The notes under the pieces are model-generated. The model was not told the origin of the DNA. It did not search any database and worked only from the letters and a program-made list of their open reading frames with translations. From Takakia lepidozioides (lineage: Eukaryota; Plantae; Bryophyta): DNA of 64,000 bases. Positions 36,401-60,300 of the stretch are shown piece by piece (position 1 is the stretch's first letter; every line of letters starts with the position of its first letter). The stretch is taken from the NCBI GenBank assembly GCA_030704615.1, contig CM060732.1:45260001-45324000 (forward strand), given 5' to 3'. The position numbers and the translations under genes were made by a program.

Positions 36401-36789
36401 TTGTTAAGCATAGCCCCTCAAATAGGTGGAAGCCACTTCCACCCGATCCTCGTCACTCAACTTGCACTACAACACACCCTATGTAATTTCGACGATTTAG
36501 TTTGACACTGGCGTTGACTGTTGTCACTTTCGACTGTTCCAACCATTTTGCAGTCAAAATTTATATTAAAATATTCGAGGTGCTAGACAACCGCAAAATT
36601 TTTGACTCTAGTGAGTTGACTACCTAAAATGAGCTGACTGAGACAACCAGTTAAGCAATGGCATGTGTAATCACAATATATAAACTATATATAGCAATAT
36701 ATATGTGGATAATAAGAAGTAGAAATATTTAACTATTTTTCACTGACCCAGGCACATTAATAGTAAACTAATCATGTGCTGGTTAAGGT

Positions 36790-37030
36790 TAGTGAAACAA
36801 AACAACTGAATTATCTGAACGAATGATAAACAAACGCCTTGCTGGCAGCTATTGGATGAACGTATGAAAAGTTAGTGAAACATAACAACTGAATTATCTG
36901 AACGAATGATAAACAAACGTCTTGCTGGCAGCTGTTGGATGAACATATGAAATATAATTTGTGTGCACTGGATGAACGTATGAATGAACGATAAAGCAAA
37001 CGCCTTGCTGGCAACTATTGGATGAACGGA
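36790..37030 (+). repeat. Tandem repeat, about 80-bp unit, 2-3 degenerate copies
   Basis: aactgaattatctgaacgaatgataaacaaacg(c/t)cttgctggcagct(a/g)ttggatgaac recurs. Confidence 0.8.
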
Positions 37031-37214
37031 AAATTAAATGGATGGATGGATAGATTGATGGAAAACCCAAAATCCATCCATCTACGATACATTCATCCAA
37101 ATAATTCAAAATGGATTTAGGGTTGCGGGATTGCGTTCAGCGATGAGTAAGTTATGGGACTTGATCGTTTTGCTGTGTTGGCGTGGGAGGATCTGCAGGA
37201 TATGCAATAGCTTG

Positions 37215-40200
37215 GGTGGACAACCGCAATCGCAAGGAGTGGCTTTTCTTAATGTACGATGTGAAGATGTTTGTCCATCCTGCAAATGTGGGCTCTTAGT
37301 ACCATGATTTGGTATTCTTCCTGATGTTTACAAGGTTCTTGGGAGAGTCGGCTTGGTCTTAGCAGGCCGTGTTTCAATCTCTGCCCGCTCAGCTGCATCG
37401 TGGTGGTTCTCGCAGACCAATCCTCTCGCAGACCAATCCGACATTACCTGACTACAGACACAAGCAGCACACACAAGAGGTGGTCAGTCAATCCTCGATG
37501 GGTCATGACACAAGGTCGAGGACAATATGGTGAGGGCACTTCTTCGACGTCTTTCAGCCTGTTTTGCCCGCTCAGCAGACTCGGCCCTGAATTTGCAGCA
37601 CGGAGCAGAGCAGGCATGAATTTTGTAAATATCCTTCACGATGGTGCGACAACCGCAATCGCAAGGTGTGGCTTTTTCTTAATGTACGAAGAAGTTTGTC
37701 CATCATGTAAATGCGGGCTGTTGGCTCCTGTTAGTACCATGATTTGGTCCTGATGTTTACAAGGTTCTTGGGAGAGAGCTTGGTCTTAGCAGGTCGTGTT
37801 TCAATCTCTGCTCAGCTGCACCGTGGTTTGTGAGAACCGTGGTTGTTCTCACAAACCAATCCGACAGTTCCTGACGATGGACACAAGCAGCACACACAAG
37901 AGGATCTTTGGGTTGATGGTCTGTCAAATCCTCCATGGGTCATGACACAAGGTCAAGGTCGACAATGTGGTGAGGGCACCTTCTTCTTCAACCTATTTCT
38001 GCCTGTTTTACCCTCTCATCAGACTCGGCCCTGAGATGCATATTGAATTCTGTAAGTTAGCTCTTTGGGTGGATCTGTGGTGGTTAGGAGTGACTTTGAC
38101 AAGTTACTGCCGATGTGGCAGCAGGAAAGTATCCAAAAACAGATAACATAGATTAGGAGAAGCTCGTTGGTGGATCTATGGTGGTTTTGGAGTGATTTTG
38201 ACATGTTACTGTAGGTAGGGTTAGGGCTTCAGTGTCAGCTGCTAGCTGCAGCAAGGCAAGGATGTGTGCATGATTTGTGCAGAGGTCTGGATAGCTGAAG
38301 GAGCAGGGATAGAGTGTGGGTCCAGATTCATCCAAGAGGGCCGAATTTCAAGCTCCAGATTACCTATGATTCCCTGTGGAAGGATAGCTACACGAAACCT
38401 GCATGGGTAGATGGTGAACTGGAAGCCACAGCACCAGCGGCTCAATTGATAAATCAAGCACTGCTAATGAAGGTACCTTCTTCAACACATTTCATCACCC
38501 TGTTTTTTCCCTCTTATCAGAATTGGCCCTAAATTTTCATGTTGAATTCTGATACTTTTCTGACCCCAGGCAATGGGGGGACAATCGAGGCAAAAAGGTG
38601 AATGCTTGTTGGATTACAAAGAGTAGCAGATGCAATTGACCATAGGAACCAGTGTGATAAGTTGAGTTAGGTGTTTCCTAGAACAAATCTAGGCTGTCAT
38701 TGTCAGGTGCTAGCAGCAAGGCAAGGATGCAGTATGCATGATTTGTTCAGAGGCATGGATAGCTGAAGGAGCAGGGATAGAGTGTGGGTCCAGGTTCATC
38801 CAAGAGGGCTGGACTTCAAGCTCCAGATTACCTATGATTCCATGTGATCAATAGCTACAAGAAACCTGCATGGGTAGATGGTCAAGTAAAGGTAGCAGCT
38901 GCAGCGGCACAGTTGATAAAATCAAGCACCTCAACCATGACCACAGCTTCTGAAAGAGGATCAAGAGAGGGAGTCCACAATGCCTCTTCTGCTGGGCATG
39001 TGAAGATGCTTTGTGAGGCAGGCAGACTGACAGAGGCTCTACAACTTTAAACTAACAAGGCATTTCAGCAGATTCAGATAGGTCTTCTGTCTCTTGCTTA
39101 AGTGCATCAAGATGAAAGGTCTGGAAGCTGGAAACAGGTGCACACTCATATTATCCAAAGTGATTGACGCCAAATTTTTTTCTACTCAACTACCTTGTCA
39201 ACATGTATGTTAAGTGTGGGAGCATCATGGATGCTCACCAGGTTTTTCCACAGAATGCCTCGACCATCTTTGATCACGTGGAATATAATGTTGGCAGGAT
39301 TTACCAAGCATGGATGTGGTAGGAATGCTTTGGAGACCTATGAAAATGTTGCACATCACATTCGTTTGTGTTTTGCAATTCGTGTGCAAGCCTGGGAGCC
39401 CTGGAAAGGGGAAAGAGGTCCATGATGACATCGTGAAAGCTGGAATTGTACCAGATGTGATTCTGAACAACACCCTCGGGGATATACATGTCAAATGTGG
39501 GCATTGAGGACGTGGAGGGAGTGTTCAACAATATGGCTGAACGAGATTTGGTGTCATGGAACGCCATGCTTGCAGGGTATGCACTACAGGGGGGCGGGAT
39601 GGAGGCCTTGGAGACCTATGAGCAATGATGGTGGAAGGGGGTGAAGCGCAACCACATCGCGTTTGTGTGCGTTTGCAGTGCGTGTGCAAGCCTGGCAGCC
39701 CTGGAAAAGGGCAAAGAGGTGCATGGTTGCATCGCCAAAGCTAGAATTGTACCAGATGTGATTTTGAACCATACCCTCGTGGACATGTATGCCAAATGTG
39801 GGTGCATTGAGCATGCGTAGGGAGTGTGCAACTATTTGAAGGAAATGCAAAAGAATGGCTTGAAGCCGGACAGTCTCACCTTTATATGTGTTCTCTCTGC
39901 ATGCAGCCACACTGGCCTACTGAATGAAGGAAATCAAGATCATGGTGTCACTCCGACAGTAAAGCACTTTGGCTGTATGGTGGACCTTCTTGGACGTGCG
40001 GGACAACTGGATGAGGCAGTGGATCTGATTAATAAGATGCCAATCAATCCAGATCTTGTGGTGTGGAAGGCCGTGCTTGGTGCCTGCAGAATCCATGGCA
40101 ATGTGGAGATGGCTAAACGTGCGGCAACATCTATCCTCAAATGGGATGAACAGGATGCCGTGACTTATGTGTTGGTATCAAACATGTATGCTGCAGCTGG

Positions 40201-41790
40201 CAGGTGGGATGATACTGCAAAGGCGAGAAGAATGATTAAGGTCAGAGGGGTTAGAAAGCAGCCAGGTCGATGCTGCATTGGGGTTGGCAACAGGGTGCAC
40301 ACCTTGCTGTAGATAACAAATTGCAATTAAGGAAATCCATGCTGAGCTGAGAAGATTGTCTCGGCAGATGAAAGGAGGCGGGGTGTGTGTCTGATACACG
40401 CTTTGTATTGCATGATGTGGGGGAGGAGGAAAAGGAATTTTCTCTTTGCCACCACAGTGAGAGGCTGGCCATTGGTTTTGGGCTGATCAGGTTTGTGTGC
40501 GGTTGCAGTGCGTGTCCAAGCCTGGCAGCCCTGGAAAAGGGCAAAGAGGCCCATGGCAACATTGTCAGAGCTGATGTGGTGTCGTAGAACTCGATGCTTG
40601 CAGGGTATGCACAGCAGGGGCACTGGATGGAGGCTTTGGCTCCAGATGTTGTGCTTGGCACACTATGTAAACCCACTATGTAAGACCAGGGAGTAGTTGA
40701 GCAGATCAGTCTCAACCCCTAGTGCCAACAAATGATGTGGATTCACGCCAAAAAGGTCTGGAAACTGGAAAGCAGGTACACACTCACAAGCATCGCAGGG
40801 TATGCAGAGCAGGGCGTGGGATGGTGGATTTGGAGACCTATGATCAAATGATGGGGGAAGGGGTGAAGCCCCAACCACATCACGTTTTTGTGTGATTGCA
40901 ATGCTTATGCAAGCCTGGCAAGCCCTGGAAAAGGTCAAAGAGGTCTATGTTGACATTGTCAAAGCTGGAATTGTACCAGATGTCATTCTGAACTCTGCCC
41001 TGGTGGACATGTTTGCCCAATGTGGGTGCATTGAGGATGCAAAGTAAGGAACTTATGTGTACTCTGTTTATATACTGGGTTGGCAGGGAGGCTTTGGAGA
41101 TTGTGAATGGGTGATGCTTGCAGGGTATGCACAGCAGGGACATGGTATGGAGGCTTTGGAGACCTATGATCAAATATTGATGGGGGAAGGGGTGAAGCCC
41201 AACCACATCACGTTGCAGCATACTGGTACTTCACAGCCATGGCGGCTCTCTTAGCCCCTCCATTTTTTTTTCTTTTGGTTTTTTTGGCGCTGGGAGAGAG
41301 CAGCAGCTCTGCTGTCTCCTTCCCCTTGCTTATGTCGATTGTTAAAGGGGAAATTGTCATTCTGAACTCTGCCTTGGTGGACATGTATGCCAAATGTGGG
41401 TGCAGCAAGCCCATAAGAGCAAATGATGTGGGAAGGGCTGAAGCCAGACCAGGCCGTCATATTCATTTGTTTTTGTAATATGCATATGCGAGCCTAGCAG
41501 CCCTGGGAAGGGGCAAAGAGGTTTATGGTGACATTATCCAAGCTGGAATTGTACCAGATGTCATTCTGAACAATCCCCTGGTGTACATCTACGTCAAATG
41601 TGAGCCTGGCAGCCATCAAAAGGGCACAAAGGTCCATGATGACATCGTCAAAGCTGGAGTTGTCACTCTAAACACTGCCTTGGTGGATATGTATTTCAAG
41701 GCAGCCATGGAAGTGGATGTCACTAAGGGTGACAAGGTAGCTGGCACCACCATTCTCTGGAACTACCTGAATTTATTCTCAAAATGATTT
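37215..41790 (+). pseudogene. Captured, rearranged gene: OSB-type PDF motifs plus PLS-class PPR, E domain and partial DYW
   Basis: PDF motif halves at 37615-37665, 37855-37950, 38553-38597 and 38794-38890. PPR motifs ([35 protein letters not shown]), E region (HFGCMVDLLGRAGQL..WKAVLGACRIHG), a PG box, and DYW start [29 protein letters not shown]. Many frameshifts and shuffled PPR pieces after 40490. Confidence 0.9.
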
Positions 41791-44700
41791 CTAATGTTCT
41801 CTTGACATGTCCACGATAGTGCTGGACCTAGCTGCACAGCAGATTATCCTTACTCAATGACTTCAGTTGGGCAGTGATCTATGGATATGGCAACATGGCC
41901 CTCATGTTGGTCATTTGTAGAATGCGGCCAAAACTTGTTTTGCAAATCACTCTTGATATAAAACCAGTTTTGAGCCATCCAATTTTTTTTTGGTTCCGAC
42001 CTGTATTTGTATTCTATGTTTTGTTGTATTTGTAATATATTTTCAATGCAGTGCAGCGAATCAAAAAATTAAATACAAGATGACAATAGGTTATCATCCA
42101 TGTTTGATTGTCATTGATATGTTGTCTAATAATTTTGATAATGGGATTGATTGATAACCCCCGGGTATGTAAAATCCTAAATAAATCTAGTATTGATCTC
42201 CGACGGGTATGTCCACAACCTCACACCGCCAATACCCGGAATCGGCAAGTATTCACTAATTCACATACGCACAGATATAAACTAAAAGTAAATAAAAAAA
42301 AACGAAATAACAGTAATAAACAAAAAAAAAACCAAATATTAAATAAAAAGCCTCACAATTCATACATATATGTATTATTATATTTATATGTATATATGTA
42401 TATACACCTCCAGAGTGAAACATATTTACTAAAATGTGTCCTCTTTTACTGCTTCACAGTAGAATATTACAATATACAAAGTCAAGCAAACTCACTATCA
42501 CTGATTTACATACTAAACATCATGGAACATAGTCAATATGTTCCACTTCAGTTAAACCACTTTACTACACGTCATGCATCCACGTCACTCTGCCCTTAAG
42601 CCACTCACTACACGTCATGCATCCACCTTATAATTCAGTTAAACCACTTTACTACACGTCATAGCCACGTCATAGCCACGTCGCATCCACGTCATATTGT
42701 GATGCCTACACGTCACCCCCTAGGTTTTACTGTCACATTTCACTGTTAGAACCTGGCATCTAGATTCGACCGCTTGACTAAAACGACTTGACATTTGTCA
42801 TGCATGTTCGACTATGGAGGCTGGGACTAAAAATGTCGCAAATGACTAAAAAATGAATCAAAATACAGAGTCGAAAAGCTCAGCTTGTATTGTAGTGTTG
42901 GCCGCCCGGAAGTATTGCTCTAGTTCCAAGAACCAGGTGTTGAGTGCCTTCCGCTTTCGGACGCCCTCCAAGGTGTCGGGTTCCTTAGGCTTCACCTTAA
43001 ACTTTGCCTTAGTGGAAGTGGCATTAGCCGCCTTCAACACGTCTTTCAACGTCCCGCCAAACTGCGCCAACAACCCTTCCCAAAAGGCTGCTGGCATGGG
43101 AGGCATCTGTTGGTCTGTCGGAGCTCTCAAGAATTCCTCGGGCTCCGACTCCTCAGATTCCTCCCGTTCTTGAGCGGCCTCGTTTTCAAAAGCATGCATC
43201 GCTTCCTCAAATGGCCGCTTCGGTGACACGTCGCCCCCATCGGGCTCACTAGGATCATCATCTTTCGGGCCGTTCCGCTTTTGCTTTGGCTTGCCCGACC
43301 CCATCCCAAGGACGATCGCGTACTGAACTCTAAGCTTTGATACCAAGTGTCGCGCACCTCACTTCGGTAAGCTCCTTTTCAAGTCATAGTTACTCGTTTT
43401 GATGCGCACACCTAACTCCCAATCTGGCCGTCGGGCCTTCTTGGAGCTTCGGCTGCTCACCGGAACATAACGGTCTCCCTTTACTCTTCCAAAAGACCCT
43501 CCACCAATTTGGGCCTAGTGGAAATTCCCTTTGGTAGATGGCAGTCCGGAATAGCTCCCCACTCCTTGGTCGTTTTTCGGCTCGCTTGCTTACTCACTAG
43601 TTTTTGGTCACCAACAGGCTTGCACCGTTCTCGGGGTTACTACTCCCTATATATACTTCTGAGACTGTCCGCGGGGTTTTCACAAACAACCATGTCATTT
43701 TATGACGAACCGCCACAAAGACCCTCAACTCCCGGTGATGAGTCGCGGTGAGTCTTGGCCCACCCACCACGGCCCCATTGGACCGTGATGAGTCCCAAGA
43801 CTCCCCACGACTCCCACCACAAGGTCTCCGCCCCATGGTGAGTCCTATGCCACCCCCACTAAGTCCCACTAAGCTACCACCACCCCTTGTGGAGCCACCC
43901 CCACCGCAACCTGGTGTGCGGGGCTCCACCTAGTGAGCGCCTCCGCCTCCTTGAGTGCCTTGGGCACTCAAGGGTGCTTCAGCCCCCCGTACCTATCGTT
44001 GCCACTGCCCCCACCACAGGGGCAACCCCTCCTACGTCCCGACCCCCTGCCGTCAAGGCAAAGGGCCGCGACAGATGTACTCGACGGCCACTAGAAGAAA
44101 AATGTGGAATAACCACTCTGTTAACCACTCATTTTGAGTGGTAAAAGACACTAAACCACTCTGGCCTCAGAATGATGAAGAACCAGTGCATTAGGACAAG
44201 TGAGTGGTAAAAGATATTACGTGGCACCGGTGGTTAATGACAATGGTTCGAACCTCTCACGTCCGGGTCCATCTGTTAGCTGACGTGTCACAGTGGTAAA
44301 TTAACCACTGTGACATGTCACTGAGGTAAACCAACCACTTATGACGTGTCACAGTGGTAAACTGACGTGTCATAGTGGTAAAGTAACCACTTCCGTTTTG
44401 TAGTGGAGAAGTGTAAGCCGGTGGTCCGTGGATGATATTGGAGATTATGTCGACACGTGGCGACACTCTCAGCATAGACACGTGTCGTGTGTCAGTGCTA
44501 CGAAATGGATGGAGTGAAAAATTCAATGACTTCCAAAACCACTTGTTGAGTGACCACAAAATGACTCATAGAGTCATTCTATGAAAACTGAGAATATACA
44601 ATATCACTCACAGAGTGGTTATGTGAGTGGATGACGTCTCTCAGCAAGGTCATTGGAATGATTACCCTTAGAATGCTGTATAAGCTATTTGAGTCATTCA

Positions 44701-47054: not shown

Positions 47055-47610
47055 ACGGCTTGTTAAGACCAAGCTAACTCTCTCTCTTGCACCAACGAGC
47101 TAACTTACAGATTTCAATATGCATATCAGGCCCGAGTCTGAAAAGAGGGCAAAACAGGCTGAAATAGGTTGAAGAAGAAGGTGCCCTCATGGCCTACTAA
47201 GACCAACCTGACTCTCTCTCTAGCACCAACAAGCTAACTTACAGAATTCAATATGCATATCAGGCCCGAGTCTGATAAGAGGGCAAAACAGGCTGAAATA
47301 GGTTGAAGAAGAAGGTGCCCTCACGGCCTGCTAAGACCAACCTGACTCTCTCTCTTGCACCAATGAGCTAACTTAACAGAATTCAATATGCATATTAGGC
47401 CTGACTTTGATAAGAGGGCAAAACAGGCTGAAATAGGTTGAAGAAGAAGGTGCCCTCACGGCCTGCTAAGACCAAGCTGACTCTCTCTCTTGCACCAATG
47501 ATCTAACTTACAGAATTCAATATGCATATCAGGCCCGAGTCTAATAAGAGGGCAAAACAGGCTGAAATAGGTTGAATCAGGAAATGAATCAGCGGGCTGC
47601 TAAGACCAAG
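47055..47610. repeat. Tandem array, about 134-bp unit x4
   Basis: Units start near 47055, 47189, 47323, 47458 and (partial) 47592: acggcctgctaagaccaagctgactctctc...gaaataggttgaagaagaaggtgccctc. Built from donor-gene intron and linker pieces. Confidence 0.92.
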
Positions 47611-47728
47611 CTGATTCTCCCAAGAACCTTGTAAACATCAGGAAGAATACCGTACTAACAGGAGCCAAAAGCCCACATTTGCAGGATGGACAAACTTCTT
47701 CACATCCTACATTAAGGAAAAGCCACAC

Positions 47729-48882: not shown

Positions 48883-48884
48883 AA

Positions 48885-49230
48885 CCTCGCGATCGCGGTT
48901 GTCCCACCATCGTGCATGCCTTCATGCCCCAATTCTAGGGGTTGAGTCCCTGTCTGCCCCCTATCCCACCAGCTCCGCTCGTCATTGTACATTGAGAAAA
49001 GCCACACCTTGCGATCGCGGTTGTCCCATCATCGTGCACGCCTTCATGCCCTGATTCTAGGTCTTGAGTCCCTGTCTGCCCCCTATCCCACCAGCTTCGC
49101 TCGTCATTGTACATTGAGAAAAAGCCACACCTTGCGATCGCGGTTGTCCCACCATCGTGCACACCTTTATGCCCCGATTCTAGGTCTTGAGTCCATGTCT
49201 GTCCCTCTCCCACCAGCTCCGCTCGTCGTC
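48885..49230. repeat. Tandem array, about 122-bp unit x3, containing the WWDNRDRK exon end
   Basis: gcgatcgcggttgtccca(c/t)catcgtgca recurs at about 48889, 49011 and 49134. Confidence 0.9.
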
Positions 49231-52200
49231 TCTCATGAACAGACTCGACACTATAAGAAAACAAACATAGCTCTGTCATGTTTGTCTTTCATGATTAAAC
49301 TCGACACAAAGAAAACAAACAGATGCCACAATGACAGGGAAGACAAAAAAAACGCTACGTCCCCTCACTCATGACTGGATGGATGAATGTAGCGATAGAT
49401 GGATGGATTTTGGGTTTTTCATCAACACACAAACCACTAAAGTTTTTCACCACAAAAGTAATACCAATCACTGTGTATGTAATCACTAACGCGTAACCAC
49501 TAGCCGAGTGGTTCCAGTTACTAAATGGTCTGTAACCACTCACTCTACACCACTCTCAAAGTGGTACCAATCAATGGGGGTCTTTAACCACTCCAGATCT
49601 ACGTATACTGTCCATGTCCACGTGGAATAATATAGTTCATAATTAAATATATTTTGAAATGATAAATCTTAAATAAAAATTGAATTATTACACATGGAGT
49701 AGCAAGTGGTTTCAATCACCTCCTATCACTCAGGTGTCTTCAACCACTCACAACCCACCACAAAAGTAGTACCAATCACTCACGTGTATGTAACCACTCA
49801 CAAGTGCGCACTTGAAGAGTGGTTCCAGTTACAAAAGGGTCTTAACCACTCACATTCCACCACTGTGCAAGTGGTACCAATCACTGGGGGGTCTTTAACC
49901 ACTCCAGAACTACGTATACTATCCTCGTCCACGTGGAATAATATATTTTGAAATGATAAAAATCTTAAAAAAAAATTATTACACGTGGAGTAGAAAGTGG
50001 TTTCAACCACTTCCCATCCCTGAGGTGTCTTTAACCACTCATAATTTATCATTGTACCCGTCCATGTCGGATATTATCATTATTAATATAAATATTTGAT
50101 CAAATATCGAATAATAAATATAAAATTAAATATTACACGTGGATTACTCAGTGGTTGAAACCACTTCCAACCACTCCATATGATGCCACCGTGGCATTTC
50201 ATCGGAATTAACCACTGACCAGTGGTTACCATTACTTGGAGTGATTTATAGAGTGATAAAAGACAAGAGTGGTTAAGGGGGCCAGTGGTTATTCCGCGTT
50301 TTTCTTCGAATGGGCGTCCTGGGCGTGCCGAGGGCGTCATGCGACGACCGACATCCCTCCCGGAATGACGCTAATTAGCATCGTGGGGGGTAGTAAACCC
50401 CCCGGGAACCCTGGCCGCGACCTGCGACCATTGACTCCGGTTTTGTCCAATGGCAGTTCATACAATGTTCTACATATATTAGCCAATGCATACTTGAACC
50501 TATGACCTCCACATTGCAACATTTCTAAGACACTACACACTAACCAACACATCTACGATACATCTATGTATCACAAAAGCGGTCTAAGTACATATATACA
50601 TAAAAAGATTTAGTTCTTGGAGACTACTACCACTATCTCAATCCTATTATTGTGTCATCGCAAATGGTGCAGTTTATAAGTACTCTGCAGAAGCTCTCAC
50701 AACTGCACCGAGACTTGTCCCCATAGTTCTTCAAGGACAAATATCTATCAAGGGAATTTTACGAAACTACATTGCAACTTATTGCTGGACAATGGATGTA
50801 GTCTAAGGATTCTAAGCCCATTATGCTCTACAATCTACTCCCAGAACCAATCTGTTGCGACGTCCCCGGGATGATGCGACGCTGGGGGGTCGCAATGGGG
50901 CGTCGCAGCCCAAGTGCGTGGGGTCACAGTGCGGCAGCCCCAGCGACGCCGGAAGGGTCCCACAATTTTTTTTTTTATTTTTTTTTATTCCCGGGCATTG
51001 CGACCCTAGCGTCGCTAGGGCTGCCGCGAGTGCGACACCAGGCGTTGGGACTGTGACGCCCCGTTGCGACCCCCCGGCGTCGCAACAAATTGGTAGTGGC
51101 GGGGGAATGAGGCCAGGCCCTTTTCCGGCGATGGCGTGGCATCGCAAGATACCACATCGTCGCCCAAGCGCCGGCGTTGCGACGCCCTGACGTCGCAAGC
51201 CAGGGCGGAGTCCCAGCGCGACACTAGAGTTGTAGCGGGGCGACACGTCTGGCGCGGGGGTGGCTATGGGCGTTGCTAACCCCCCTAAATGTAGTAGTGA
51301 CACAATGTTGCGGCCCTTTGCCTTGAGGGCATGGGGTCGGGACGCAGAGGGGCTGCCCCTGTGGTGGGGGCGGTGGCAGCAATAGGTACGGGGGGGCTAA
51401 AGCACCCTTGAGTGCCCAAGCACTCAAGGAGGCGGAGGCACTCACTAGGTGGAGCCCCGCACACCGGGTTGCGGTGGGGGTGGCTCCACAAGGGGTGGTG
51501 ATAGCTTTAGTGGGACTTAGTGGGGGTGGCATAGGACTCACCATGGAGTGGAGACCTTGTGGTGGGAGTCGTGGGGAGTCTTGGGACTCACCACGGTCCA
51601 ATGGGGCCGTGGTGGGTGGGCCAAAGACTCACCGCGACTCATCACTGGGAATCGAGGGTCTTTGTGGTGGTTCGCCATAAAAGGATGGTGTTGTTTGTGG
51701 AACCCCCGCGGACACTCACAAAAGTATATATAGGGAGTAGTAACCCCGAGAACAGTGCAAGCCCGTTGGTGACCAAAAACTAGTGAGTAAGCAAGCGAGC
51801 CGGAAAGTGACCAAGGAGTGGAGAGCTATTCCGGATTGCCATCTACCAAAGGGAATTTCCACTAGGCCCAAATCGGTGGAGGGTCTGTTGGGGGGAGAAA
51901 AGGGGACCGTTATGTCCCGGTGAGCAGCCGAAGCTCCGAGTTGGCCCGGTGGCCAGGTTGGGAGTTAGGCGTGCGCATCAAAGCGAGTAACTATGACGTG
52001 AAGGGGAGCTTACCGAAGTGAGGTGCGCGACACTTGGTATCAGAGCTTAGAGTTCAGTACGCGATCGTCCTTGGGATCGGCCTCATCATGGGGTCGGGCA
52101 AGCCAAAGCGAAAGCGGAACGGCCCGAAAGATGATGATCCCGGTGAGCCCGATGGGGGCGACATGTAACCAAAGCGGCCATTTGAGGAAGCGATGCATGC

Positions 52201-54398
52201 TTTTGAAAATGAGGCCTCTCAAGAACGGGAGGAATCTGAGGAGTCGGAGCCCGAGGAATCCCTGAGAGCTCCGACAGACCAACAGATGTCTCCCATGCCA
52301 TGAGCCTTTTGGGAAGGGCTGTTGGCGCAGTTTGGCGGGACGTTGAAAGACGTATTGAAGGCGGCTAATGTCACTTCCACTAAGGCAAAGTTTAAGGTGA
52401 AGCCTAAGGAACCCGGCACCTTCGAGGGCGTCCGAAATCGGGAGGCACTCAACACCTGGTTCTTGGAGCTAGAGCAGTACTTCCGGGCGGCCAAGTTGAG
52501 TGATGAGGATTGGGTGGAAGTGGCTTCCACCTATTTGAGGGGCTATGCTCAACAATGGTGACAGAAACACCTTCACGACCGAGGTCCAAACCCGGAAACC
52601 TTGAACTGGAGTGGGTTCAAGGAACCGATGAAGAGACAGTTTGTGCCCCTCAACGCGTCCTGGCTCGCCCGGGACAAGATGAGGAATCTAAAGCAAACGG
52701 ATGACATTCGGGGATATGTTCAAGCTTTTAATGTGCTGTTGCTCGAAGTCGCGGACATGGCAGAACCAGAAATGGTCTTCAACTTTGTGGCGGGACTGGC
52801 CCCATGGGCCAGGCGGAAGTTGGAGGAGAAGCCACCTACGACTTTGAAGGAGGCAATTGAGAGGGCTGAATGTTTCTCGAATGTCTCTAGGGGCGAAAGA
52901 CAAGGCCGTACGGAGCTGAACCACAAGAAGACCCGGCGGGAGGGTGACTCTTTTCGACCGGAAAATAAGTGGGATAGGCCACGCGGCGACAATGACACGT
53001 GGAAATCAAAGGGAGGGCCTTCACACGCCAAGATGACACCCGGTGCTCCAAAAGAAAAATCAGGTGCGACGCCTTACAGCGGATAAAAGGCGACCTTCGA
53101 TGGAGTGTGCTTCAATTGTGGGGAGCCCGGGCACATGACCAAGAAGTGTACGAATCCCCGACAATTGAACATGACTCGGGCAACCACGGAGTTGTCCAAA
53201 GCTTCCATCAGCCGCTTGGTGGAGGCGGTGGTCGCCAAGACTTGCAAGGTAGGCAACTACTCTTGTGAGTTGTATCAGGAAACTGACGCTTTGCATAAAG
53301 GGAGTCAGTTAATGTTTGTGAGTGGGATAATCTCTGGAACTAACGTGTCGTTGTTGGTGGACACAATAGCATCGCACTCCTTCATGACATCGGCAACGAC
53401 ACGGAAGCTGGGACTCCCGACAAGTGATGTGGGGGTTGTTATTGAGTTGCGTTTTGCTAAAGGAGAACCACAATTGGCGACAAGATTGGCGTTCGATGTT
53501 CCTCTTCAGCTCGGGAGTTGGGAGAGACGTGAGAATTCACCATTTGCGAGATCGATGGAGTGGATCTCATTTTGGGGATGACCTTTTTGAGCAGATCCGG
53601 AGCGGTCATAAATGACTGTAAGAGAGTAGTCACACTACCGTGTGGGAATGGTGGCGAAGTTTTACGAGTGTTGGAAACACCCAACCCCGTGGGAGGGCGA
53701 ATAAACCTTCTGTCAACAAATGAGTGGGCCGTGGAGGAGTCACACGAGCCCCAGTTTTTGCTTTATGTAAGACAAGTGAAGGGGGAAGGCGATGGGGAGC
53801 CGAGCCCAGATTGGATCAAGGGGATTTTGGAGAAATACCAAGATGTGATGCCGGAGGATTTACCAAGCGGCTTGCCATCGCGAAGGGGAGTTGACCACAA
53901 GATTGAGGTGATACCGGGATCGGAGCCGCCTGCCAAGGCGCCCTATCGGTTGAGCCACAGAGAGTTGGTCGAGCTGAAGACTCAGCTCAAGGATCTAATG
54001 TCAAAGGGGTACATCCAACCGAGTAAGTCACATTATGGAGCCCCGGTGCTATTCGCAGACAAGAAGGATGGGACGCTGCGAACCCGGGGGGTGCACTCTT
54101 CATAAAAGGACCATATCACGTGCGTGCATTAGTCAATAAAAAAAACCCATGTATATAGGTTACTTCATGAATTTATCATATGTATACATACATTTTAAAA
54201 TTTATTAAACCCCTTAAAGTATATATATATATTTAATGGATAACAACACCCTGCTGTATGTATTCATGTGTTGATTCAGAATATAATAAACCCTTTATTT
54301 ATGTACAATTTTTAATACAAAATTGTGACAAAATTTTTACATCAGATTTAAAAAATATTTAAAATAACTTGTATAACAAATAAAAATTAGTGTCAAAT

Positions 54399-54655
54399 TT
54401 ATTTTCCATTGATGAAATTGTTAAAAACTGTTTTATCATTTGGATCGAGCTTATACCTATTAGAGGCTGCATCATACTTTAAAAAAGCTAATGCTATGAT
54501 AGACTCTAGATCAACCATCATATTGTCCGTCAAAATCATAGGAGTAAAATCATCCTTTCACTTTTTCGTACCAAGCTAAATCTATTTCTACATTGGAAGG
54601 CCGAATCAACAAATCAATTGGATCCTTATACTCAATTCGTCGATTATTGACTTTT
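54399..54655 (-). pseudogene. Probable transposase C-terminus remnant
   Basis: KVNNRRIEYKDPIDLLIRPSNVEIDLAWYEKV..YD.TDNMMVDLESIIALAFLKYDAASNRYKLDPNDKTVFNNFINGK*. Aligns by eye with KYDSSDIQWIDVDTIILTVTMAFEPSQNLYS.DPSDDAALIEFVANEN* at 29265-29415. Confidence 0.6.
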
Positions 54656-54711
54656 CGACGCATTTTCTGAACCCTACCCAAATACCAAAAACCTTTTGTC
54701 ACCTCATGACA

Positions 54712-54821
54712 CCTCATGTCAGACTGTGTCGTGAGGGGATACTTGAGGACCTCATAATGATGAAGCTTGTTCCTGGCAGGGGGCTGAGGCGAGGATACTT
54801 GGGTGTACGGCCTCTCTTCAC
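54712..54821 (-). pseudogene. RPL23A: Captured fragment of 60S ribosomal protein L23a (uL23)
   Basis: KRGRTPKYPRLS-(1-nt frameshift)-PARNKLHHYEVLKYPLTTQSDMR matches the plant L23a signature PKYPR.SAP.RNKLD.Y.ILKYPLTTESAMK. Confidence 0.85.
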
Positions 54822-54899
54822 CTGTGTATAAACCATGAATACAACCTCAGCCTTGCTACTAGCAGCTGCAGCAGCTGAGACTGACGGCGTGAAGGTCTT

Positions 54900-57320
54900 C
54901 CAGCAAACACCCCAACCCTACCTACAGTAACATATCAAAATCACTACAAAACACCATAGATCGACCAACGAGCTTCTCCTCATCTATGTTATTTGTTTTT
55001 GGATACTTTCATGCTGCCACATCGGTAGTAACTTGTCAAAGTCACTCCTAACCACCACATATCCACCCAACAAGCTAACTTAAAGAATTCAATATGCATC
55101 TCAGGGCCAAGTCTGATGAGAGGGTAAAACAAGACCTCTTGTGTGTGCAGCTTGTGTATGCAGCGTTCAGAATGACATCTGATAATCTGACAGGTGCCAA
55201 CGTTGTCCCACCATTGACTGGGGTCAGAAAAATATTTATACCACAGCTTCTCCTTATCTTTGTTACCTGTTTAATTTGGATACTTTCCTGTTGTCACATA
55301 GGCTGTATCATGTCAAAGTCACTCCAAACTACCAAAGTATCAGCTAACATGCAGAATTCAACATGGAAATTTAGGGCAGATTCTGATAAGAGGGGAAAAC
55401 GGGGTGGAATGTGTAAAAAATGTGCCTTCTCCTCATCCATGTTATCTGTTTTTGGTTACTTTCCTGCTGCCACACTAGCAGTAACTTGTCAAAGTCTCTC
55501 CTAACCACCACAGATCCACACAACAAACTAACTTCCAGAATTCAATATGCATCTCAGGGCCGAGTCTGCAGCATTCAGAATGACATCTGATAATTTGCAG
55601 GCATTCACCTTTTTGCCTCGTTTGTCCCACCATTGGCTGGGGTCAGAAAAGTATTCATCCCACAACTTCTCCTCATATTTGTTTACCTGTTTTGGATACT
55701 TTCATGTGTCACATTGGCAATATCATGTCAAAGTCACTCCAAACTACCATTAAAGGTTCACTCACAACTAACTTGCAAAATTCAACATGGAAAATTAGGG
55801 CAGATTCTGATAAGAGGGGAAAACAAGGTGAAATGTGTTGAAGAAGGTGCCTTCTCCTCATCTATGTTATCTATTATTGGATACTTTCCTGCTGCCACAT
55901 CGGCAGTAACTTGTCAAAGTCACTCCTAACCACCACATATCCACCCAACGAGCTAACTTACATAGTTCAATATGCATCTTAGGGCCGAATCTGATGAGAG
56001 GGTAAAACAGACAGAAATAGGTTGAAGAAAAAGGTGCCCTCACCACATTGTCCTTGACCTTGTGTCATGACCCATGGAGGATTTCACCGAACATCAACCC
56101 TAAAGAACCTCTTGTGTGTGCAGCTTGTGTGTGCAGCCTTCAAAACATCTGGTAATCTGCAGGCATTCACCTTTTTGCATCGTTTGTCCCACAATTGGCT
56201 GGGGTCAGAAAAGTATTCATCCCACAGCTTCTCCTCATCTCTGTTTACCTGTTTTTTGATACTTTCCTGTGTCACATTGGCAGTATCATGTCAAAGTCAC
56301 TCCAAACTACCATTAAAGGTTCACTCAATCAACTAACTTGCAGAATTCAACATGAAAATGTAGGGCAGATTCTGATAAGCGGGGAAAACATGGTGAAATG
56401 TGTTGAAGAAGGTGCTTCTCCTACCCTATGTGATCTGTTTTTGGATACTTTCCTGCTGCCACATCAGCAGTAACTTGTCAAAGTCACTCCTAACCACCAC
56501 GGATCCCCCAGCGAGCTAACTTACAGAGTTCAATACGCATCTCAAGGCCGAGTCTGATGAGAGGGTAAAACATGCAGAAATAGGTTGAAGAAGAAGATGC
56601 ACTCACCACATTGTCCTTGACCTTGTGTCATGACCCATGGAGGATTTTACCGAACATCAACCCTAAAGAATCTCTTATGTGTGCAGCTTGTGCCTGAAGC
56701 CTTAAGAATGATATCTGGTAATCTGTAGGGATTCACCTTTTTGCCTTGTTTGTCCCACCATTGGCTGGGGTCGTTCATCCCACAGCTTCTTCTCATCTCT
56801 GTTTACCTGTTTTTGGATACCTTCCTGTGTCACATTGGCAGTATCATTTCAAAGTCACTCCAAACTACCAAAGGTTCACTCAACCAGCTACCTTGCAGAA
56901 TTCAACATAGAAATGTCGGGCCGATTCTGATAAGAGGGGAAAACAGAGTGAAATGTGTTGAAGAAGGTGCCTTCTCCTCAACTATGTTATCTGTTTTTGG
57001 ATACTTTCCTGCTATCCCATGGCAATAACTTGTCAAAGTCACCACCACAGATCCACCCAACGAGCTAAAGTATAGAATTCATGCATCTCAGGGCCGAGTC
57101 TGATGAGAGGGGAAAACAGGCAGAAATAGGTCAAAGAAGAAGCTGCCCTCACCACGTTGTTCTTGACCTTGTGTCATGACCCATGGAGGATTTGACCGAC
57201 CATCAACCCAAAAGGACCTCTAGTGTGTGTTGCTTGTGTCTGTAGTCAGGTATTGTCGGATTTCTCTGTGAGAACCACCACGGTGCAGCTAGGCAGATAG
57301 AGATTGACACACGGCCTGCC
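54900..57320 (-). repeat. Tandem array of PDF-motif/linker units, about 4.5 copies of a 410-565 bp unit
   Basis: Marker gaatgacatctg(a/g)taat at about 55170, 55578, 56143 and 56706. Each unit encodes a DEEKLWDEYFSDPSQWWDKRGKK-like segment, and the longer units also a HTQE..VDVR.NPPWVMTQG-like segment. Confidence 0.88.
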
Positions 57321-60300
57321 CCAACTTGCGCGCAACAGAAGAAGACAAGGTGAGCGCGTTGCAGAAGAGGACGAGGACGAGGACGATGACGAGGTCTGCG
57401 CGGCGGATAGGGCTTAGTGCTAGGCGGGAAAAAAAAAACATCTCAAAAAGAATTTGAGCACAGGATGCTGCGGCTGGCGAACGAAGACCTTATCAGTACG
57501 CTACACACTAACATCTACAACATTACCTCATATATATATATTTTAGGACTTTTCCAACCCTTTTGTATATACATAGTTTTGTATGTGGGGATATTAATAA
57601 ACCCCATTCTGTTCACGCACGTGATAGGTACATTAAACCTTGGTGCACCCCCCGGGGCTGCGGATGTGTGTCGATTACAGGGCCCTGAATAAGGTGACTA
57701 TCAAGAACCGGTACCCTTTGCTAAGGATCGACGATCTCTTCGATCGGTTGGCAGAAGCGAAGTATTTCAGCCGGATCGATTTTCGCTTCGGGTACCATCA
57801 AATCCGAGTGGCGGAAGGAGATGAGGAGAAAACCGCGTGCAGGTCAAGATATTGTTCGTATGAGTTCTTGGTGATGCTTTTTGGCCTCACCAACGCACCC
57901 GCGACCTTTAGCACGCTAATGAACAACCTTTTCCAGGAGTGGCTGGATGTCTTTGTGATTATGTACATCGACGACATCTTGGTGTACTCGAAAACAAAGG
58001 AAGAGCACCTGGAGCACCTCAAAAGGGTGTTCCAGAAATTGCGGGAAGGGAAGCTGTATGCCAGAGCTTCAAAGTGCAAATTCGGGGTCACAAAAGTGGA
58101 GTTCCTAGGGCATGTGATTACACAGGATGGGATCAAAATGGATGACAGAAAGGTGATGGCAATCTTGGACTGGGAACCTCCGACTTCGGTCCCGGGAGTG
58201 CGATCCTTCCTAGGACTCGTCTCCTATTACCGAAAGTATGTGAGAAATTTTGCCAAGATCGCAGGGCCGCTGTCAGACCTTCTGTGTAAATCCAAGGTAT
58301 GGGTATGGAACACCTTTTGTGGCCAAGCTTTTGCCGAGTTGAAGCAGCGGATGGTGGAAGCTCCAGTCTTGAAAATCCCGGAGTTCGACCGCCCGTTTGA
58401 GATTCATACAGATGCGTCGGACTTCGCGATTGGGGATGTATAATGCAAGATGGACGTCCAGTGGCTTCCGAAAGTAAGAAACTGAATGAAGTGGAGCGAC
58501 GGTGGCCAACGCATGAGAAAGAGATGAAGGTGGTGGTGCATTGCCTTGAGCTTTGGCGCCACTGTATTGGTTCCAATCCGGTGAAGGTATTCACGGACAA
58601 TGTCACGGTGAAGTATTTTGCCACGCAGCCTAAGTTGTCCCCAAAACAAATTAGGTGGCAAGACACTTTGGCACTGTTCGACGTGGATATCCAATACAAA
58701 CCGGGACGGGACAATGTGGTGGCCGATGCTTTAAGTAGAAAACAACAGCTTTTGTTGGTGTACAGGGGCGAGACGACCCTCCAAAGGAAGATCTGGAAGG
58801 CTTACCGGAAGGATGAGATGGCGAAGTCCGTGATGCGGGACTTGAGGATGGGGGTTAAATCGCAGTTCCACTTGCAAAATGGACTGCTCCGGTATAAGCA
58901 AAAACGTCTCTAGGTGCCGAAAGGAGGGATCAGAGATAGTCTCTTGAGAGAATGTCATGATGGCCCGCTTGCGGGCCATGGCGAAGCCAAGCGCACCGCT
59001 GCACTCTTGAAGAAAGAATATTTCTGGCCCAAACTGAGGGAGGAGGCCGAGGAGTATGTCAAGACATGCACCACATGCCAACAAAACCGGAGCGAGTACA
59101 AGAAGCAAGCGGGGCTGTTACAACCCTTGCCGATTCCAGAGGGGTCTTGGGAAAGTGTCTCGATGGATTTCATGACTGCTATGCCGCTGTCAAAAGGATT
59201 CGATGCAATCATGGTGGTGGTGGATAGGTTCAGTAAAATGGGTCATTTCATCCCCACCAAGGAGACGATAACGACACAGGAGACGTGACGACTTTACTTC
59301 GCCCATGTCTTCAAGCATCATGGACTCCCGAAGGATATTGTCTCGGACCGCGATCCAAAGTTTACAAGTAAATTTTGGAGGGCACTTTGGAAGAAGATGG
59401 GGACGAGGCTCAAGATGAGCACCGCCTTCCGACCTACGACGGACGGCCAAACGGAAAGGGTAAATTCCGTGGTGAAGCAAATCTTGCGGAATTACGTGTC
59501 GGCGGACCAATCGGACTGGGTGGAGCACTTGGACGCGATAGAGTTCTGATATAATAACACAAAACACTCCGCAACGGGTGTTTTCCCTTTCGTATTGGTC
59601 TATGAAAAGCACCTCTAGTGCCGACAAATTGGGCTGCTCAAGACGTTGAGGAACCAGCAGCAACAGCGGTGTTGGAGGAACGCGAGCGCTTGTTGAAGCT
59701 CACAAAGTACAACATTGCCAAAGCTAGGAAACGGTATGAATGGCAGACAAATCGGAAGCGGAAGGAAGTCAAGTTTGAGGTAGGCACGGAGGTCTGGTTG
59801 AACATCAAGAATTTTCGACTACCTCCAGAAGTGAATCCGAAGTCGTATCTCCGTATGCGGGGCCCTTTCGCATCCGGAGAGTTATGAATGAGGATGTGTA
59901 TGAATTGGAGCTGCCGGCAAACAGCAAGATGCATCCGGTATTCCACGTCTCTTTTTTGAAGCCTTACTTCAAAGATGAAGCGCGTCCGAATCGGCATCAA
60001 GTGTTTCGTCCACCACCTATGCTGTTGGATCATGAAAATGAATCTGAGTACGAGGTGGAGACAGTGCTTAAGTCGAGGAGGTTCAAGAAACGGAGTATCG
60101 TGAAATGGAAGGGCTATCATCATGTGGAGGCATCTTGGGTGCGTGCCTCAGAAATGGAAAACGCATCCGAGAGAAATTACATTCCCATCACTGCACCATA
60201 CAAGCAAATAACATTGTTGTAAGACCGAAACACCAATACAAAAGCTTAGTCACTCCAACTCAAGGGATTGTTGACTACGGCTGACTAGAAGATCGTTCAA

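What the first reader, a model, noticed from the sequence alone, without database searches (positions are those of the whole stretch)
36465..57656. Three different DNA-transposon shells within 21 kb carry the same gene cargo
Seen: two CACTA elements with different TIRs (36465-42897, TSD ttg; 44089-50312, TSD ggc) and an 8-bp-TSD element with unrelated TIRs (54083-57656) all contain PDF-PPR donor pieces. The two CACTA cargos share an aberrant junction, aaatgtgagcct(g/a)gcagcc (about 41597 versus the reverse complement at about 45195-45215). They also share the upstream block aaaacccaaaatccatccatcta (about 37062 versus the reverse complement at about 49395-49418). The cargo was therefore rearranged before it was distributed. 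Established: Pack-CACTA, Pack-MULE and Pack-hAT gene capture is known. Inference: the same cargo crossing superfamily boundaries suggests cargo exchange between non-autonomous elements, by template switching during gap repair using a neighbouring element. This could be a route for PPR family expansion and shuffling.
Basis: partly seen in the sequence, partly recalled or inferred. Interest (0 to 1): 0.8.

Follow-up and report, generated by a model that had tools for sequence, protein, structure and literature searches.

The report
Three transposon types sharing one gene cargo
Three dead cut-and-paste transposons with unrelated ends, sitting in a retrotransposon nest of a seedless-plant genome, all carry decayed pieces of one PDF-PPR RNA-editing gene lineage; the sharing is real and two of them clearly jumped with it, but nothing shows that they swapped it with each other at this spot.

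Summary
CACTA1 (36465-42897, TSD TTG) and the 8-bp-TSD element E3 (54083-57656) are each inserted in one of two inverted copies of the same LTR retrotransposon. Each uninterrupted copy shows the other's empty site, so both moved as units with their cargo. CACTA2 (44089-50312, TSD GGC) has unrelated termini.

All three carry PDF-motif modules, the N-terminal module of PPR proteins of Diphasiastrum and Sphagnum. PPR sequence itself is in CACTA1 (about 2.5 kb, with E and partial DYW) and CACTA2 (280 bp plus a 61-bp scrap). E3 has none.

The CACTA1 and CACTA2 cargos are collinear and about 92-94% identical. They share a non-native tandem-duplication junction (YVKC|ASLAAL), so they descend from one rearranged cargo now sitting in two CACTA families. 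For E3 I found no shared derived junction, so a separate capture from the same gene is not excluded.

None of the three copies can be the parent of another. I found no conversion tracts and no nested termini. Exchange with a neighbour by template switching is therefore unsupported.

All cargo is pseudogenic. The scan had already noted the same cargo in other shells elsewhere in this genome (unchecked notes).

The parts
30780..44073 (-). LTR retrotransposon copy A, the host of CACTA1. LTRs at 30780-31505 and 43348-44073; 5-bp TSD GACGT/GATGT. The strand is inferred from copy B, whose reverse-transcriptase ORF is on + and which is inverted relative to A.
   Evidence: (LTR pair 95.3% identical, K2P 0.049).
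36465..42897 (+). CACTA1, a non-autonomous CACTA element with TSD TTG. Shell-only DNA is 36465-37054 and about 41700-42897.
   Evidence: (empty site in copy B); no transposase domain in its ORFs.
37055..37099 (+). Block U, 46 bp, 93% identical to 49425-49380 of CACTA2. It lies at the inner edge of the subterminal repeats in both elements.
37213..39050 (+). CACTA1 cargo, PDF part: at least five decayed PDF-motif modules with intron-like spacers (37591-37668, 37801-37950, 38341-38436, 38553-38606, 38847-39047).
   Evidence: tblastn with N-termini of Diphasiastrum and Sphagnum PPR proteins.
39170..41700 (+). CACTA1 cargo, PPR part: PLS-type PPR repeats, an E motif (39824-40309), a partial DYW (about 40330-40500), then rearranged PPR units. 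Every reading frame of 39170-40500 carries 11 or more stop codons.
   Evidence: Pfam E_motif 2e-15 and PPR.
41417..41614 (+). 198-bp block shared with CACTA2 45390-45196 (92-94%). It holds the non-native junction YVKC|ASLAAL at 41596-41614.
   Evidence: None of 848 MYxKC sites in 200 PPR proteins continues this way. The paralogous native unit at 39356-39499 continues differently.
44089..50312 (-). CACTA2, a second non-autonomous CACTA family with TSD GGC. Its cargo (45192-49425) is collinear with that of CACTA1 but on the opposite strand. It has its own arrays: 134 bp x4.2 at 47054-47619 and 122 bp x2.8 at 48884-49227.
45196..45476 (-). The only PPR stretch of CACTA2. It keeps a native L-motif to the left of the shared block, where CACTA1 has a deletion junction.
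46901..46961 (-). 61-bp E-motif scrap, 96.7% identical to CACTA1 40066-40126, displaced into the PDF part of CACTA2.
51306..60171 (+). LTR retrotransposon copy B, inverted relative to A and the host of E3. LTR at 51306-52032; reverse-transcriptase ORF at 57640-58443.
   Evidence: RVT_1 2.5e-34.
54083..57656 (-). E3, a non-autonomous TIR element with an 8-bp TSD. Shell DNA is 54083-54819 and 57320-57656. The cargo at 54820-57319 consists of PDF modules only, mostly as tandem units of about 565 bp (X-Y-Z).

Best explanation
This is a transposon nest in a seedless land plant. Three non-autonomous Pack-type DNA transposons with unrelated termini carry decayed DNA-level copies, spacers included, of one PDF-PPR-E-DYW editing-factor gene lineage. 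They are two different CACTA families and one 8-bp-TSD element.

Shown: CACTA1 and E3 transposed as whole units with their cargo. The CACTA1 and CACTA2 cargos descend from a single copy that had already been rearranged. After the lineages split, each cargo decayed and amplified on its own.

Inferred: the cargo passed from one CACTA family to the other, or one family's termini were replaced, before these copies landed here. That was a rare chimera-forming event. It could have been abortive gap repair with an ectopic template, or two elements of one family flanking another element's cargo followed by loss of their inner ends. The chimeras then spread by ordinary transposition.

E3 acquired its PDF modules either from such a cargo or directly from the same gene. 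The proximity of the three is most likely a by-product of how common such cargo-bearing elements are in this genome, not the cause of the sharing.
For: Empty sites in the paralogous retrotransposon copies show unit insertion of CACTA1 (3-bp TSD) and E3 (8-bp TSD).

The termini of the three shells are unrelated, and none of the ORFs of 70 aa or more that were submitted to Pfam has a transposase domain.

The cargo is genic. Pfam finds PPR and an E motif, and the translation reads a partial DYW. PDF modules in all three match the N-termini of PPR proteins P0033, P0015, P0053, P0002, P0010 and P0004, with E-values down to 6e-10.

The CACTA1 and CACTA2 cargos are collinear from block U to the PPR junction block. 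Across 732 ungapped sites there are 56 mismatches, spread evenly.

In the B1/B2 module quartet, orthologous modules group across elements: 9 sites support this against 2.

The two cargos share the non-native junction at 41596-41614 and 45196-45214.

Lineage-specific arrays formed after the split: the four CACTA2 134-bp units form one clade (98/100). The E3 X and Y units are distinct from each other, and the Y remnants of CACTA1 and CACTA2 pair together inside the Y clade.

No inverted termini bound the cargo inside any shell.

Earlier unchecked notes of this scan report the same cargo in other CACTA, hAT-like and MULE-like shells elsewhere in the genome.
Against: No other copy of any of the three families could be examined. 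That the chimeras are families which formed elsewhere rests on unchecked notes.

E3 shares no derived junction with the CACTA cargos, so a cargo crossing a superfamily boundary is not demonstrated.

The cargo distances (0.056-0.064 for the best blocks) are statistically indistinguishable from the LTR-LTR distance of 0.049. Timing alone therefore cannot exclude an event at this locus.

The coincident left edge (block U abuts the subterminal repeats in both CACTAs) is not predicted by random template switching or by random flanking insertions.

The module at CACTA2 46463-46792 is much more distant from its CACTA1 counterparts (K2P 0.21, and 85.6% identity to module A1). This may reflect paralogous modules or a mosaic origin.
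Confidence: 0.55

Rival explanations
1. One reading: after the elements had landed next to each other, excision and gap repair of one element switched template to a neighbouring element. This copied the neighbour's cargo into a foreign shell at this locus.
For: Three cargo-bearing elements lie within 21 kb. The cargo distances of the best blocks (0.056-0.064) are close to the LTR-LTR distance of the host retrotransposon (0.049), so the timing does not exclude it. In E3, a 16-nt string at the Z|X unit junctions is identical to PPR codons of the CACTA cargos and could be filler DNA.
Against: No present copy can be the template of another. CACTA1 has a truncated Y segment that CACTA2 and E3 keep whole. 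CACTA2 keeps a native L-motif where CACTA1 has a deletion junction. CACTA2 lacks a full X unit, and E3 lacks all PPR. There is no conversion-like tract: the longest identical run is 55, matched in 1007 of 2000 shuffles. Cargo-bearing elements of these kinds are noted on many other pieces of the genome (unchecked).
Confidence: 0.1
2. Independent captures: each transposon family separately picked up DNA from the same donor locus, or from very recent paralogues in a very large PDF-PPR-DYW gene family. No transposon-to-transposon transfer took place.
For: The PDF-PPR architecture is a real family in Diphasiastrum and Sphagnum, and earlier unchecked notes call it very abundant in this genome. E3 shares no derived junction with the CACTA cargos. 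The CACTA1 X unit has only 3 private differences in 278 sites, while the E3 units have 4-14 each. That would fit a later capture from a slowly evolving gene.
Against: CACTA1 and CACTA2 share a non-native tandem-duplication junction, the same module order and the same left edge. Independent capture would then need a donor that was already a rearranged pseudogene, and near-identical capture limits. The B1/B2 quartet does not show CACTA1 to be generally slow-evolving.
Confidence: 0.25
3. The cargo is a separate mobile element, such as a Helitron or another nested transposon, that inserted into each of the three shells.
For: Elsewhere in this genome a supposed cargo-bearing piggyBac turned out to hold a nested CACTA (note s1-473532).
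Against: The cargo limits differ between shells. E3 spans only what corresponds to CACTA1 37362-38286, plus amplified units. No inverted repeats flank the cargo inside any shell. CACTA-type TIR words inside E3 and CACTA2 are chance matches lying within cargo homology. No Helitron-like ends were seen at the shared edges.
Confidence: 0.04
4. Assembly artefact or chance similarity.
For: None found.
Against: The copies differ by 6-20% and by many indels. The two retrotransposon copies differ by 8-12% and each shows a clean empty site for the other's insertion. BLAST E-values go down to 1e-159.
Confidence: 0.01

Closest known systems
Pack-CACTA elements (Catoni et al. 2018, PMC6379663); soybean Tgm-Express and Ipomoea Tpn1 from my own knowledge
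   Same: Non-autonomous elements with CACTA termini, a 3-bp TSD and no transposase. Their interior is made of host gene fragments captured as DNA, and they move as a unit.
   Different: Here two CACTA families with unrelated TIRs and subterminal repeats hold one and the same rearranged cargo lineage. The cargo is nearly a whole gene (about 4.6 kb in CACTA1) from a PDF-PPR-DYW family, in a seedless plant.
Pack-TYPE elements across all class II superfamilies (Gisby and Catoni 2022, PMC8903248), including Pack-MULE and Pack-hAT
   Same: E3 is a TIR element with a TSD, no transposase and a gene-derived interior.
   Different: The E3 superfamily is not assignable. Its interior is one gene module amplified into a tandem array of about 565 bp. 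In the papers I read I found no report of the same cargo in different superfamilies; that was not an exhaustive search.
Recombination between Mutator elements of divergent clades that uncouples TIRs from internal sequence (PMC10401008; title and abstract only)
   Same: Termini and interior of a DNA transposon have different histories.
   Different: That case concerns transposase-bearing elements within one superfamily. Here it is captured host DNA, and at least across two CACTA families.
Abortive gap repair with filler DNA in Ac/Ds and Mu (my own knowledge, not checked here)
   Same: It would yield elements that keep their termini and gain foreign interior DNA.
   Different: No breakpoint microhomology or donor-recipient pair could be established here.

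Membership tests
CACTA (En/Spm) superfamily: CACTA1 | Termini 5'-CACTA...TAGTG-3' | tested here: met
   CACTACAACACA... and ...TGTATTGTAGTG.
CACTA (En/Spm) superfamily: CACTA1 | 3-bp target site duplication | tested here: met
   TTG/TTG; the paralogous empty site holds a single TTG.
CACTA (En/Spm) superfamily: CACTA2 | CACTA termini, 3-bp TSD, subterminal repeats | tested here: met
   One end reads CACTAG, the other CATTCG (mutated). The 29-nt TIR is 86% complementary. TSD GGC/GGC. TAACCACT motifs occur at both ends. No empty site is available.
Pack-TYPE transposon (all three elements) | No transposase gene | tested here: met
   Pfam scans of 17 ORFs of 70 aa or more lying in or overlapping the three shells gave only PPR and E-motif matches. 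ORFs shorter than 70 aa were not scanned.
Pack-TYPE transposon (all three elements) | Interior derived from host gene(s) | tested here: met
   PPR, E motif and partial DYW. PDF modules matching N-termini of Diphasiastrum and Sphagnum PPR proteins in all three.
Pack-TYPE transposon (all three elements) | Mobilised together with the cargo | tested here: met
   Shown for CACTA1 and E3 by paralogous empty sites. Not testable for CACTA2.
hAT superfamily: E3 | 8-bp TSD | tested here: met
   GCTGCGAA/GCTGCGGA; the empty site holds a single GCTGCGGA.
hAT superfamily: E3 | Short TIR starting YARNG; hAT transposase relatives | tested here: not met
   The TIR starts CCCGGGGGGTGCAC. There is no transposase to test. 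The YARNG consensus is from my own knowledge.
Mutator-like (Pack-MULE): E3 | 9-11 bp TSD and long (100 bp or more) TIRs | tested here: not met
   The TSD is 8 bp. The TIR is perfect for 14 nt, followed only by patches of inverted similarity out to about 150 nt.
Helitron-borne cargo | Constant 5'-TC and 3'-CTRR ends with a hairpin, inserted at A|T | tested here: not met
   Cargo edges differ between shells, and none shows such ends by eye. No dedicated Helitron scan was run.

The most novel reading that the evidence does not exclude
In this genome one captured PDF-PPR-DYW cargo has been handed on repeatedly between unrelated DNA-transposon families: from CACTA to CACTA and on to an 8-bp-TSD element. 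Cargo exchange between transposons would then be a regular process. It would be a main way in which sequences of the huge PPR-DYW editing-factor family get scattered, duplicated and recombined in seedless plants.
Probability: 0.2. Interest if true: 0.65.

Novelty: new variant of a known kind. Interest (0 to 1): 0.4.

Why it matters
Gene capture by DNA transposons is well known. It is usually described as one transposon family taking pieces from host genes. Here two elements with different insertion chemistry (3-bp and 8-bp TSD) demonstrably moved pieces of the same gene lineage. Two CACTA families share a cargo that had already been rearranged, which means that termini and cargo of Pack elements can be re-paired.

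If a genome-wide survey confirms this, it would add a step to models of how Pack elements form. It would also give a DNA-level route for scattering PPR-DYW sequences in lineages where this family is enormous; for seed plants, retroposition is the usual explanation for PPR expansion (my own knowledge).

As it stands, all copies here are dead pseudogene fragments and no function is implied.

Tried and rejected
1. Triticeae-type reading of the CACTAs. I dropped it once earlier notes and the protein hits pointed to a seedless plant.

2. Finding other copies or the donor gene. The best database relatives of the PPR-E ORF are at most 56% identical, and at most 46% identical in tblastn alignments of the representative proteins to the cargo. 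The DNA collections hold no plant genomes. No phylogeny of cargo against genomic paralogues could be made.

3. Nested-element test. Words resembling the CACTA1 TIR inside E3 (54942) and CACTA2 (44395, 44947) are chance matches. No internal TIR pairs bound the cargo.

4. Timing. LTR K2P is 0.049 against cargo 0.056-0.10. This is inconclusive, also because the transition:transversion ratios differ strongly (29:5 against about 1:1).

5. Relative-rate test. The CACTA1 X unit is unusually close to the ancestor of the E3 array, but the B1/B2 quartet shows no general slowness of CACTA1. I draw no conclusion from it.

6. Gene-conversion test on the 732-site CACTA1-CACTA2 block: negative.

7. Exact exon and intron mapping of the PDF modules by eye. 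I abandoned it as unreliable without a native gene from this genome. I built and searched no joined (spliced) model.


Full report
SETTING. The window is plant DNA with about 46% G+C. A self-comparison shows that 30.8-60.2 kb is a transposon nest.

LTR retrotransposon copy A spans 30780-44073. Its 726-bp LTRs are at 30780-31505 and 43348-44073 and are 95.3% identical (K2P 0.049). Its 5-bp TSD is GACGT/GATGT. Copy B of the same family lies inverted at 51306-60171. It is 88-95% identical to A and has an RVT_1 ORF at 57640-58443.

Copy A is interrupted at 36465-42897. Copy B is interrupted at 54083-57656. A third element, 44089-50312, lies 15 bp beyond the end of copy A.

THE THREE SHELLS ARE REAL AND UNRELATED.

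CACTA1 has CACTACAA(C/T)ACA termini and TTG on both sides. The uninterrupted copy B reads CACTCAAC-TTG-GCCGCCCGG once at the corresponding place.

E3 has a perfect 14-nt TIR, CCCGGGGGGTGCAC, a second inverted patch (TATCACGTGCGTG), and GCTGCGAA/GCTGCGGA on its flanks. The uninterrupted copy A reads GGGAC-GCTGCGGA-TGTGTG once.

Each retrotransposon copy therefore serves as the empty site for the other's insertion. This shows that CACTA1 (3-bp TSD) and E3 (8-bp TSD) were inserted as whole units, cargo included.

CACTA2 has a 29-nt TIR that is 86% complementary. One end is mutated from CACTA to CATTC. It has GGC on both flanks and TAACCACT subterminal motifs at both ends. No empty site is available for it.

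With word size 7 the terminal regions of the three elements share nothing. None of the ORFs of 70 aa or more that were submitted to Pfam has a transposase domain.

The superfamily of E3 cannot be settled. The TSD length fits hAT but the TIR does not. The TSD is too short, and the TIR too poorly extended, for a typical MULE.

THE CARGO IS GENE-DERIVED.

In CACTA1, 39170-41700 is PLS-type PPR sequence. Pfam finds an E motif at 2e-15 and PPR motifs in the one long ORF, 39824-40309. Translation shows a partial DYW domain up to about 40500 and then further, rearranged PPR units. Every reading frame of 39170-40500 carries 11 or more stop codons, so this is a pseudogene.

A full-library phmmer search with that ORF returned PPR proteins. 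Several of them also match, through their N-termini, the region upstream of the PPR part in CACTA1, and they match CACTA2 and E3 as well. These N-termini carry the motif ...LWxxFFSDPSQWWDNR..K.N..YPDFKHK.T...LWI.G..NPPWV. This matches the description of the 'PDF motif' of the organellar ssDNA-binding OSB proteins (PMC6963530); the OSB consensus itself is from my recollection. The proteins are from Diphasiastrum complanatum and Sphagnum.

A focused tblastn places decayed PDF modules as follows:
- CACTA1 (+): 37591-37668, 37801-37950, 38341-38436, 38553-38606, 38847-39047.
- CACTA2 (-): 45499-45648, 45827-45925, 46144-46233, 46446-46511, 46750-46788.
- E3 (-): 55205-55264, 55600-55683, 56060-56242 (E = 6e-10), 56623-56775, 57169-57280.

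Here I tested only that the architecture exists in database proteins and that the cargo matches it.

CACTA1 thus holds nearly a whole gene: upstream DNA, several PDF modules with spacers, PPR repeats, an E motif and part of DYW. It was captured as genomic DNA.

WHO SHARES WHAT.

The cargo of CACTA2 (49425 down to 45192, minus strand) is collinear with that of CACTA1 (37055 up to about 41700). The shared parts are:
- Block U, 46 bp at 93%.
- The PDF region.
- A long block, 38225-38970 against 46340-45477. It has 732 ungapped sites and 56 mismatches (92.3%), plus a 128-bp segment that CACTA1 lacks.
- A 198-bp PPR block, 41417-41614 against 45390-45196 (K2P 0.064).

CACTA2 has only 280 bp of PPR sequence, plus a displaced 61-bp E-motif scrap that is 96.7% identical to CACTA1 40066-40126.

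E3 matches only CACTA1 37362-38286, 38468-38617 and, weakly, 38658-38753. All of this is PDF-module sequence. It is arranged as about four and a half tandem units of about 565 bp, which I call X-Y-Z. The best identities to CACTA1 are 93-94% (K2P 0.060-0.076). E3 has no PPR repeats.

THE SHARED JUNCTION.

The string AAATGTGAGCCT(G/A)GCAGCC lies at 41596-41614 and, reverse-complemented, at 45196-45214. It sits inside the 198-bp block. In translation it joins ...VYIYVKC to (A)SLAA... This is the end of one roughly 113-bp PPR sub-unit running straight into the start of the same sub-unit, which makes it a tandem-duplication junction.

The paralogous native unit in CACTA1 (39356-39499) instead continues with the normal G-IEDVEGVF sequence. 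None of 848 MYxKC sites in the 200 PPR proteins I fetched continues into ASLAAL. The junction is therefore derived, and it is shared by CACTA1 and CACTA2.

An earlier follow-up (s1-476383) described 125-129-bp PPR-fragment arrays in other CACTAs of this genome. That is consistent, but I did not check it.

In the quartet of duplicated B modules, 9 sites group orthologous modules across elements and only 2 group modules within an element. The internal duplication therefore also predates the split of the two cargos.

I conclude that CACTA1 and CACTA2 carry descendants of one cargo that had already been rearranged.

WHAT IS NOT SHOWN.

(i) E3. I found no derived junction shared between E3 and the CACTA cargos. 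Its last unit runs from X into the start of B1, in the same order as in both CACTAs, but that order may simply be the gene's own. E3 could have taken its modules from the gene itself.

(ii) Neighbours as templates. Each copy has parts that the others lack:
- CACTA1 has a truncated Y segment (38469-38551) that CACTA2 (45888-46015) and E3 keep.
- To the left of the 198-bp block, CACTA2 keeps a native L-motif (...VKHGYRIKTLE-EQMMW...) where CACTA1 has another deletion junction.
- CACTA2 lacks a complete X unit.
- E3 lacks all PPR sequence.

None of the present copies can therefore be the parent of another, unless deletions occurred later. The 732-site block shows no conversion tract: its longest identical run is 55, and 1007 of 2000 shuffles reach that. 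Cargo distances are not lower than the LTR-LTR distance of the retrotransposon into which CACTA1 inserted. The comparison is weak, though, because the substitution spectra differ.

(iii) Mechanism. Template switching during gap repair is possible. So is the model derived from live Pack-CACTA mobilisation in Arabidopsis, in which two nearby insertions lose their inner ends and mobilise what lies between them (PMC6379663). Two elements of one family flanking another element's cargo would give the same result. Nothing here discriminates between the two.

(iv) Nested carrier. No inverted termini bound the cargo in any shell. Look-alike CACTA words inside E3 and CACTA2 are chance matches. The cargo limits also differ between E3 and the CACTAs. 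A single nested carrier element is therefore unlikely.

AFTER THE SPLIT.

A tree of the X and Y intron-like units shows three things:
- The four 134-bp units of CACTA2 form one clade (98/100).
- The Y clade (98/96) contains the four E3 Y units, with the Y remnants of CACTA1 and CACTA2 paired inside it (87/86).
- The X units form a star.

Each element therefore amplified its own piece of the cargo: a 565-bp unit in E3, and 134-bp and 122-bp units in CACTA2.

UNEXPLAINED POINTS.

The CACTA1 X unit has only 3 private differences in 278 sites against the majority of the five E3 X units. The E3 units carry 4-14 each. The CACTA1 copy thus looks like the ancestor of the E3 array. The B quartet does not show CACTA1 to be generally slow-evolving.

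A 16-nt string at the Z|X junctions of E3 equals the VPDVILN codons of the PPR units, where none is expected by chance. It could be filler DNA or a coincidence of PD codons.

Block U abuts the subterminal repeat arrays of both CACTA shells within about 25 bp, yet unrelated DNA follows it on the inside.

CONTEXT FROM THE SCAN (unchecked notes). The same genome has many notes on:
- Pack-CACTAs with PDF/PPR cargo.
- The same cargo in CACTAs with different TIRs (s1-470265).
- A 3.4-kb 'Pack-hAT' with PDF fragments (s1-462759), of a size similar to E3.
- A MULE-like family with PPR-DYW pseudogenes.
- A supposed cargo-bearing piggyBac that a follow-up resolved as a nested CACTA (s1-473532).

If these hold, cargo-bearing shells are multi-copy families and their co-occurrence here needs no local exchange. 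I could not test this. The DNA collections hold no plant genomes.

VERDICT. Crossing to another superfamily, the role of the neighbours, the mechanism and any role in PPR family expansion all remain open. This is a new variant of the known Pack-transposon theme, of moderate interest. Its value depends on a genome-wide survey that these tools could not run.

Noticed in passing
window 37881-38162 versus 54973-57239: The single X unit of CACTA1 has 3 private differences in 278 sites against the majority of five E3 X units, which carry 4-14 each. It looks like the ancestor of the E3 array. Under a clock this is odd, unless the CACTA1 cargo was captured later from a slowly evolving gene.
   Followed up: partly
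window 55167-55182, 55575-55590 (-); 40976-40991, 41554-41569 (+); 45241-45256 (-): A 16-nt string (CCAGATGTCATTCTGA, one mismatch in E3) lies at the junction between the two halves of the E3 PDF units. It is identical to the VPDVILN codons of the PPR units in both CACTA cargos, with none expected by chance. It may be filler DNA, a short conversion or coincidence.
   Followed up: partly
window 37055-37099 and 49380-49425: The 46-bp block U lies within about 25 bp of the inner edge of the subterminal repeat arrays in both CACTA families. Inside it are 113 and 220 bp of unrelated DNA. A coincident cargo edge is not what random breakpoints would give, so U might be a functional or shell-associated motif.
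   Followed up: partly
window 46901-46961 and 40066-40126: A 61-bp E-motif fragment, 96.7% identical between the two CACTAs, sits displaced among the PDF modules in CACTA2. This is a further rearrangement private to CACTA2.
   Followed up: no
window 30780-44073: A complete LTR retrotransposon: 726-bp LTRs 95.3% identical with a transition:transversion ratio of 29:5, and TSD GACGT/GATGT. The DNA just left of the 5' LTR (...gcgaca-gacgt) resembles the element's own 3' end plus TSD.
   Followed up: no
proteins P0033 (Sphagnum fallax), P0015, P0053, P0002, P0010, P0004 (Diphasiastrum complanatum): PPR proteins of a moss and a lycophyte carry one to two PDF motifs at the N-terminus, in front of the PPR array. 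The N-terminus of P0004 also resembles the intron-like DNA upstream of the second half of the PDF module in CACTA1 (37801-37950). This suggests a conserved intron or a read-through annotation.
   Followed up: partly
window 50313-51305 and 44074-44088: I did not characterise the DNA that hosts CACTA2, which lies between the two inverted retrotransposon copies.
   Followed up: no
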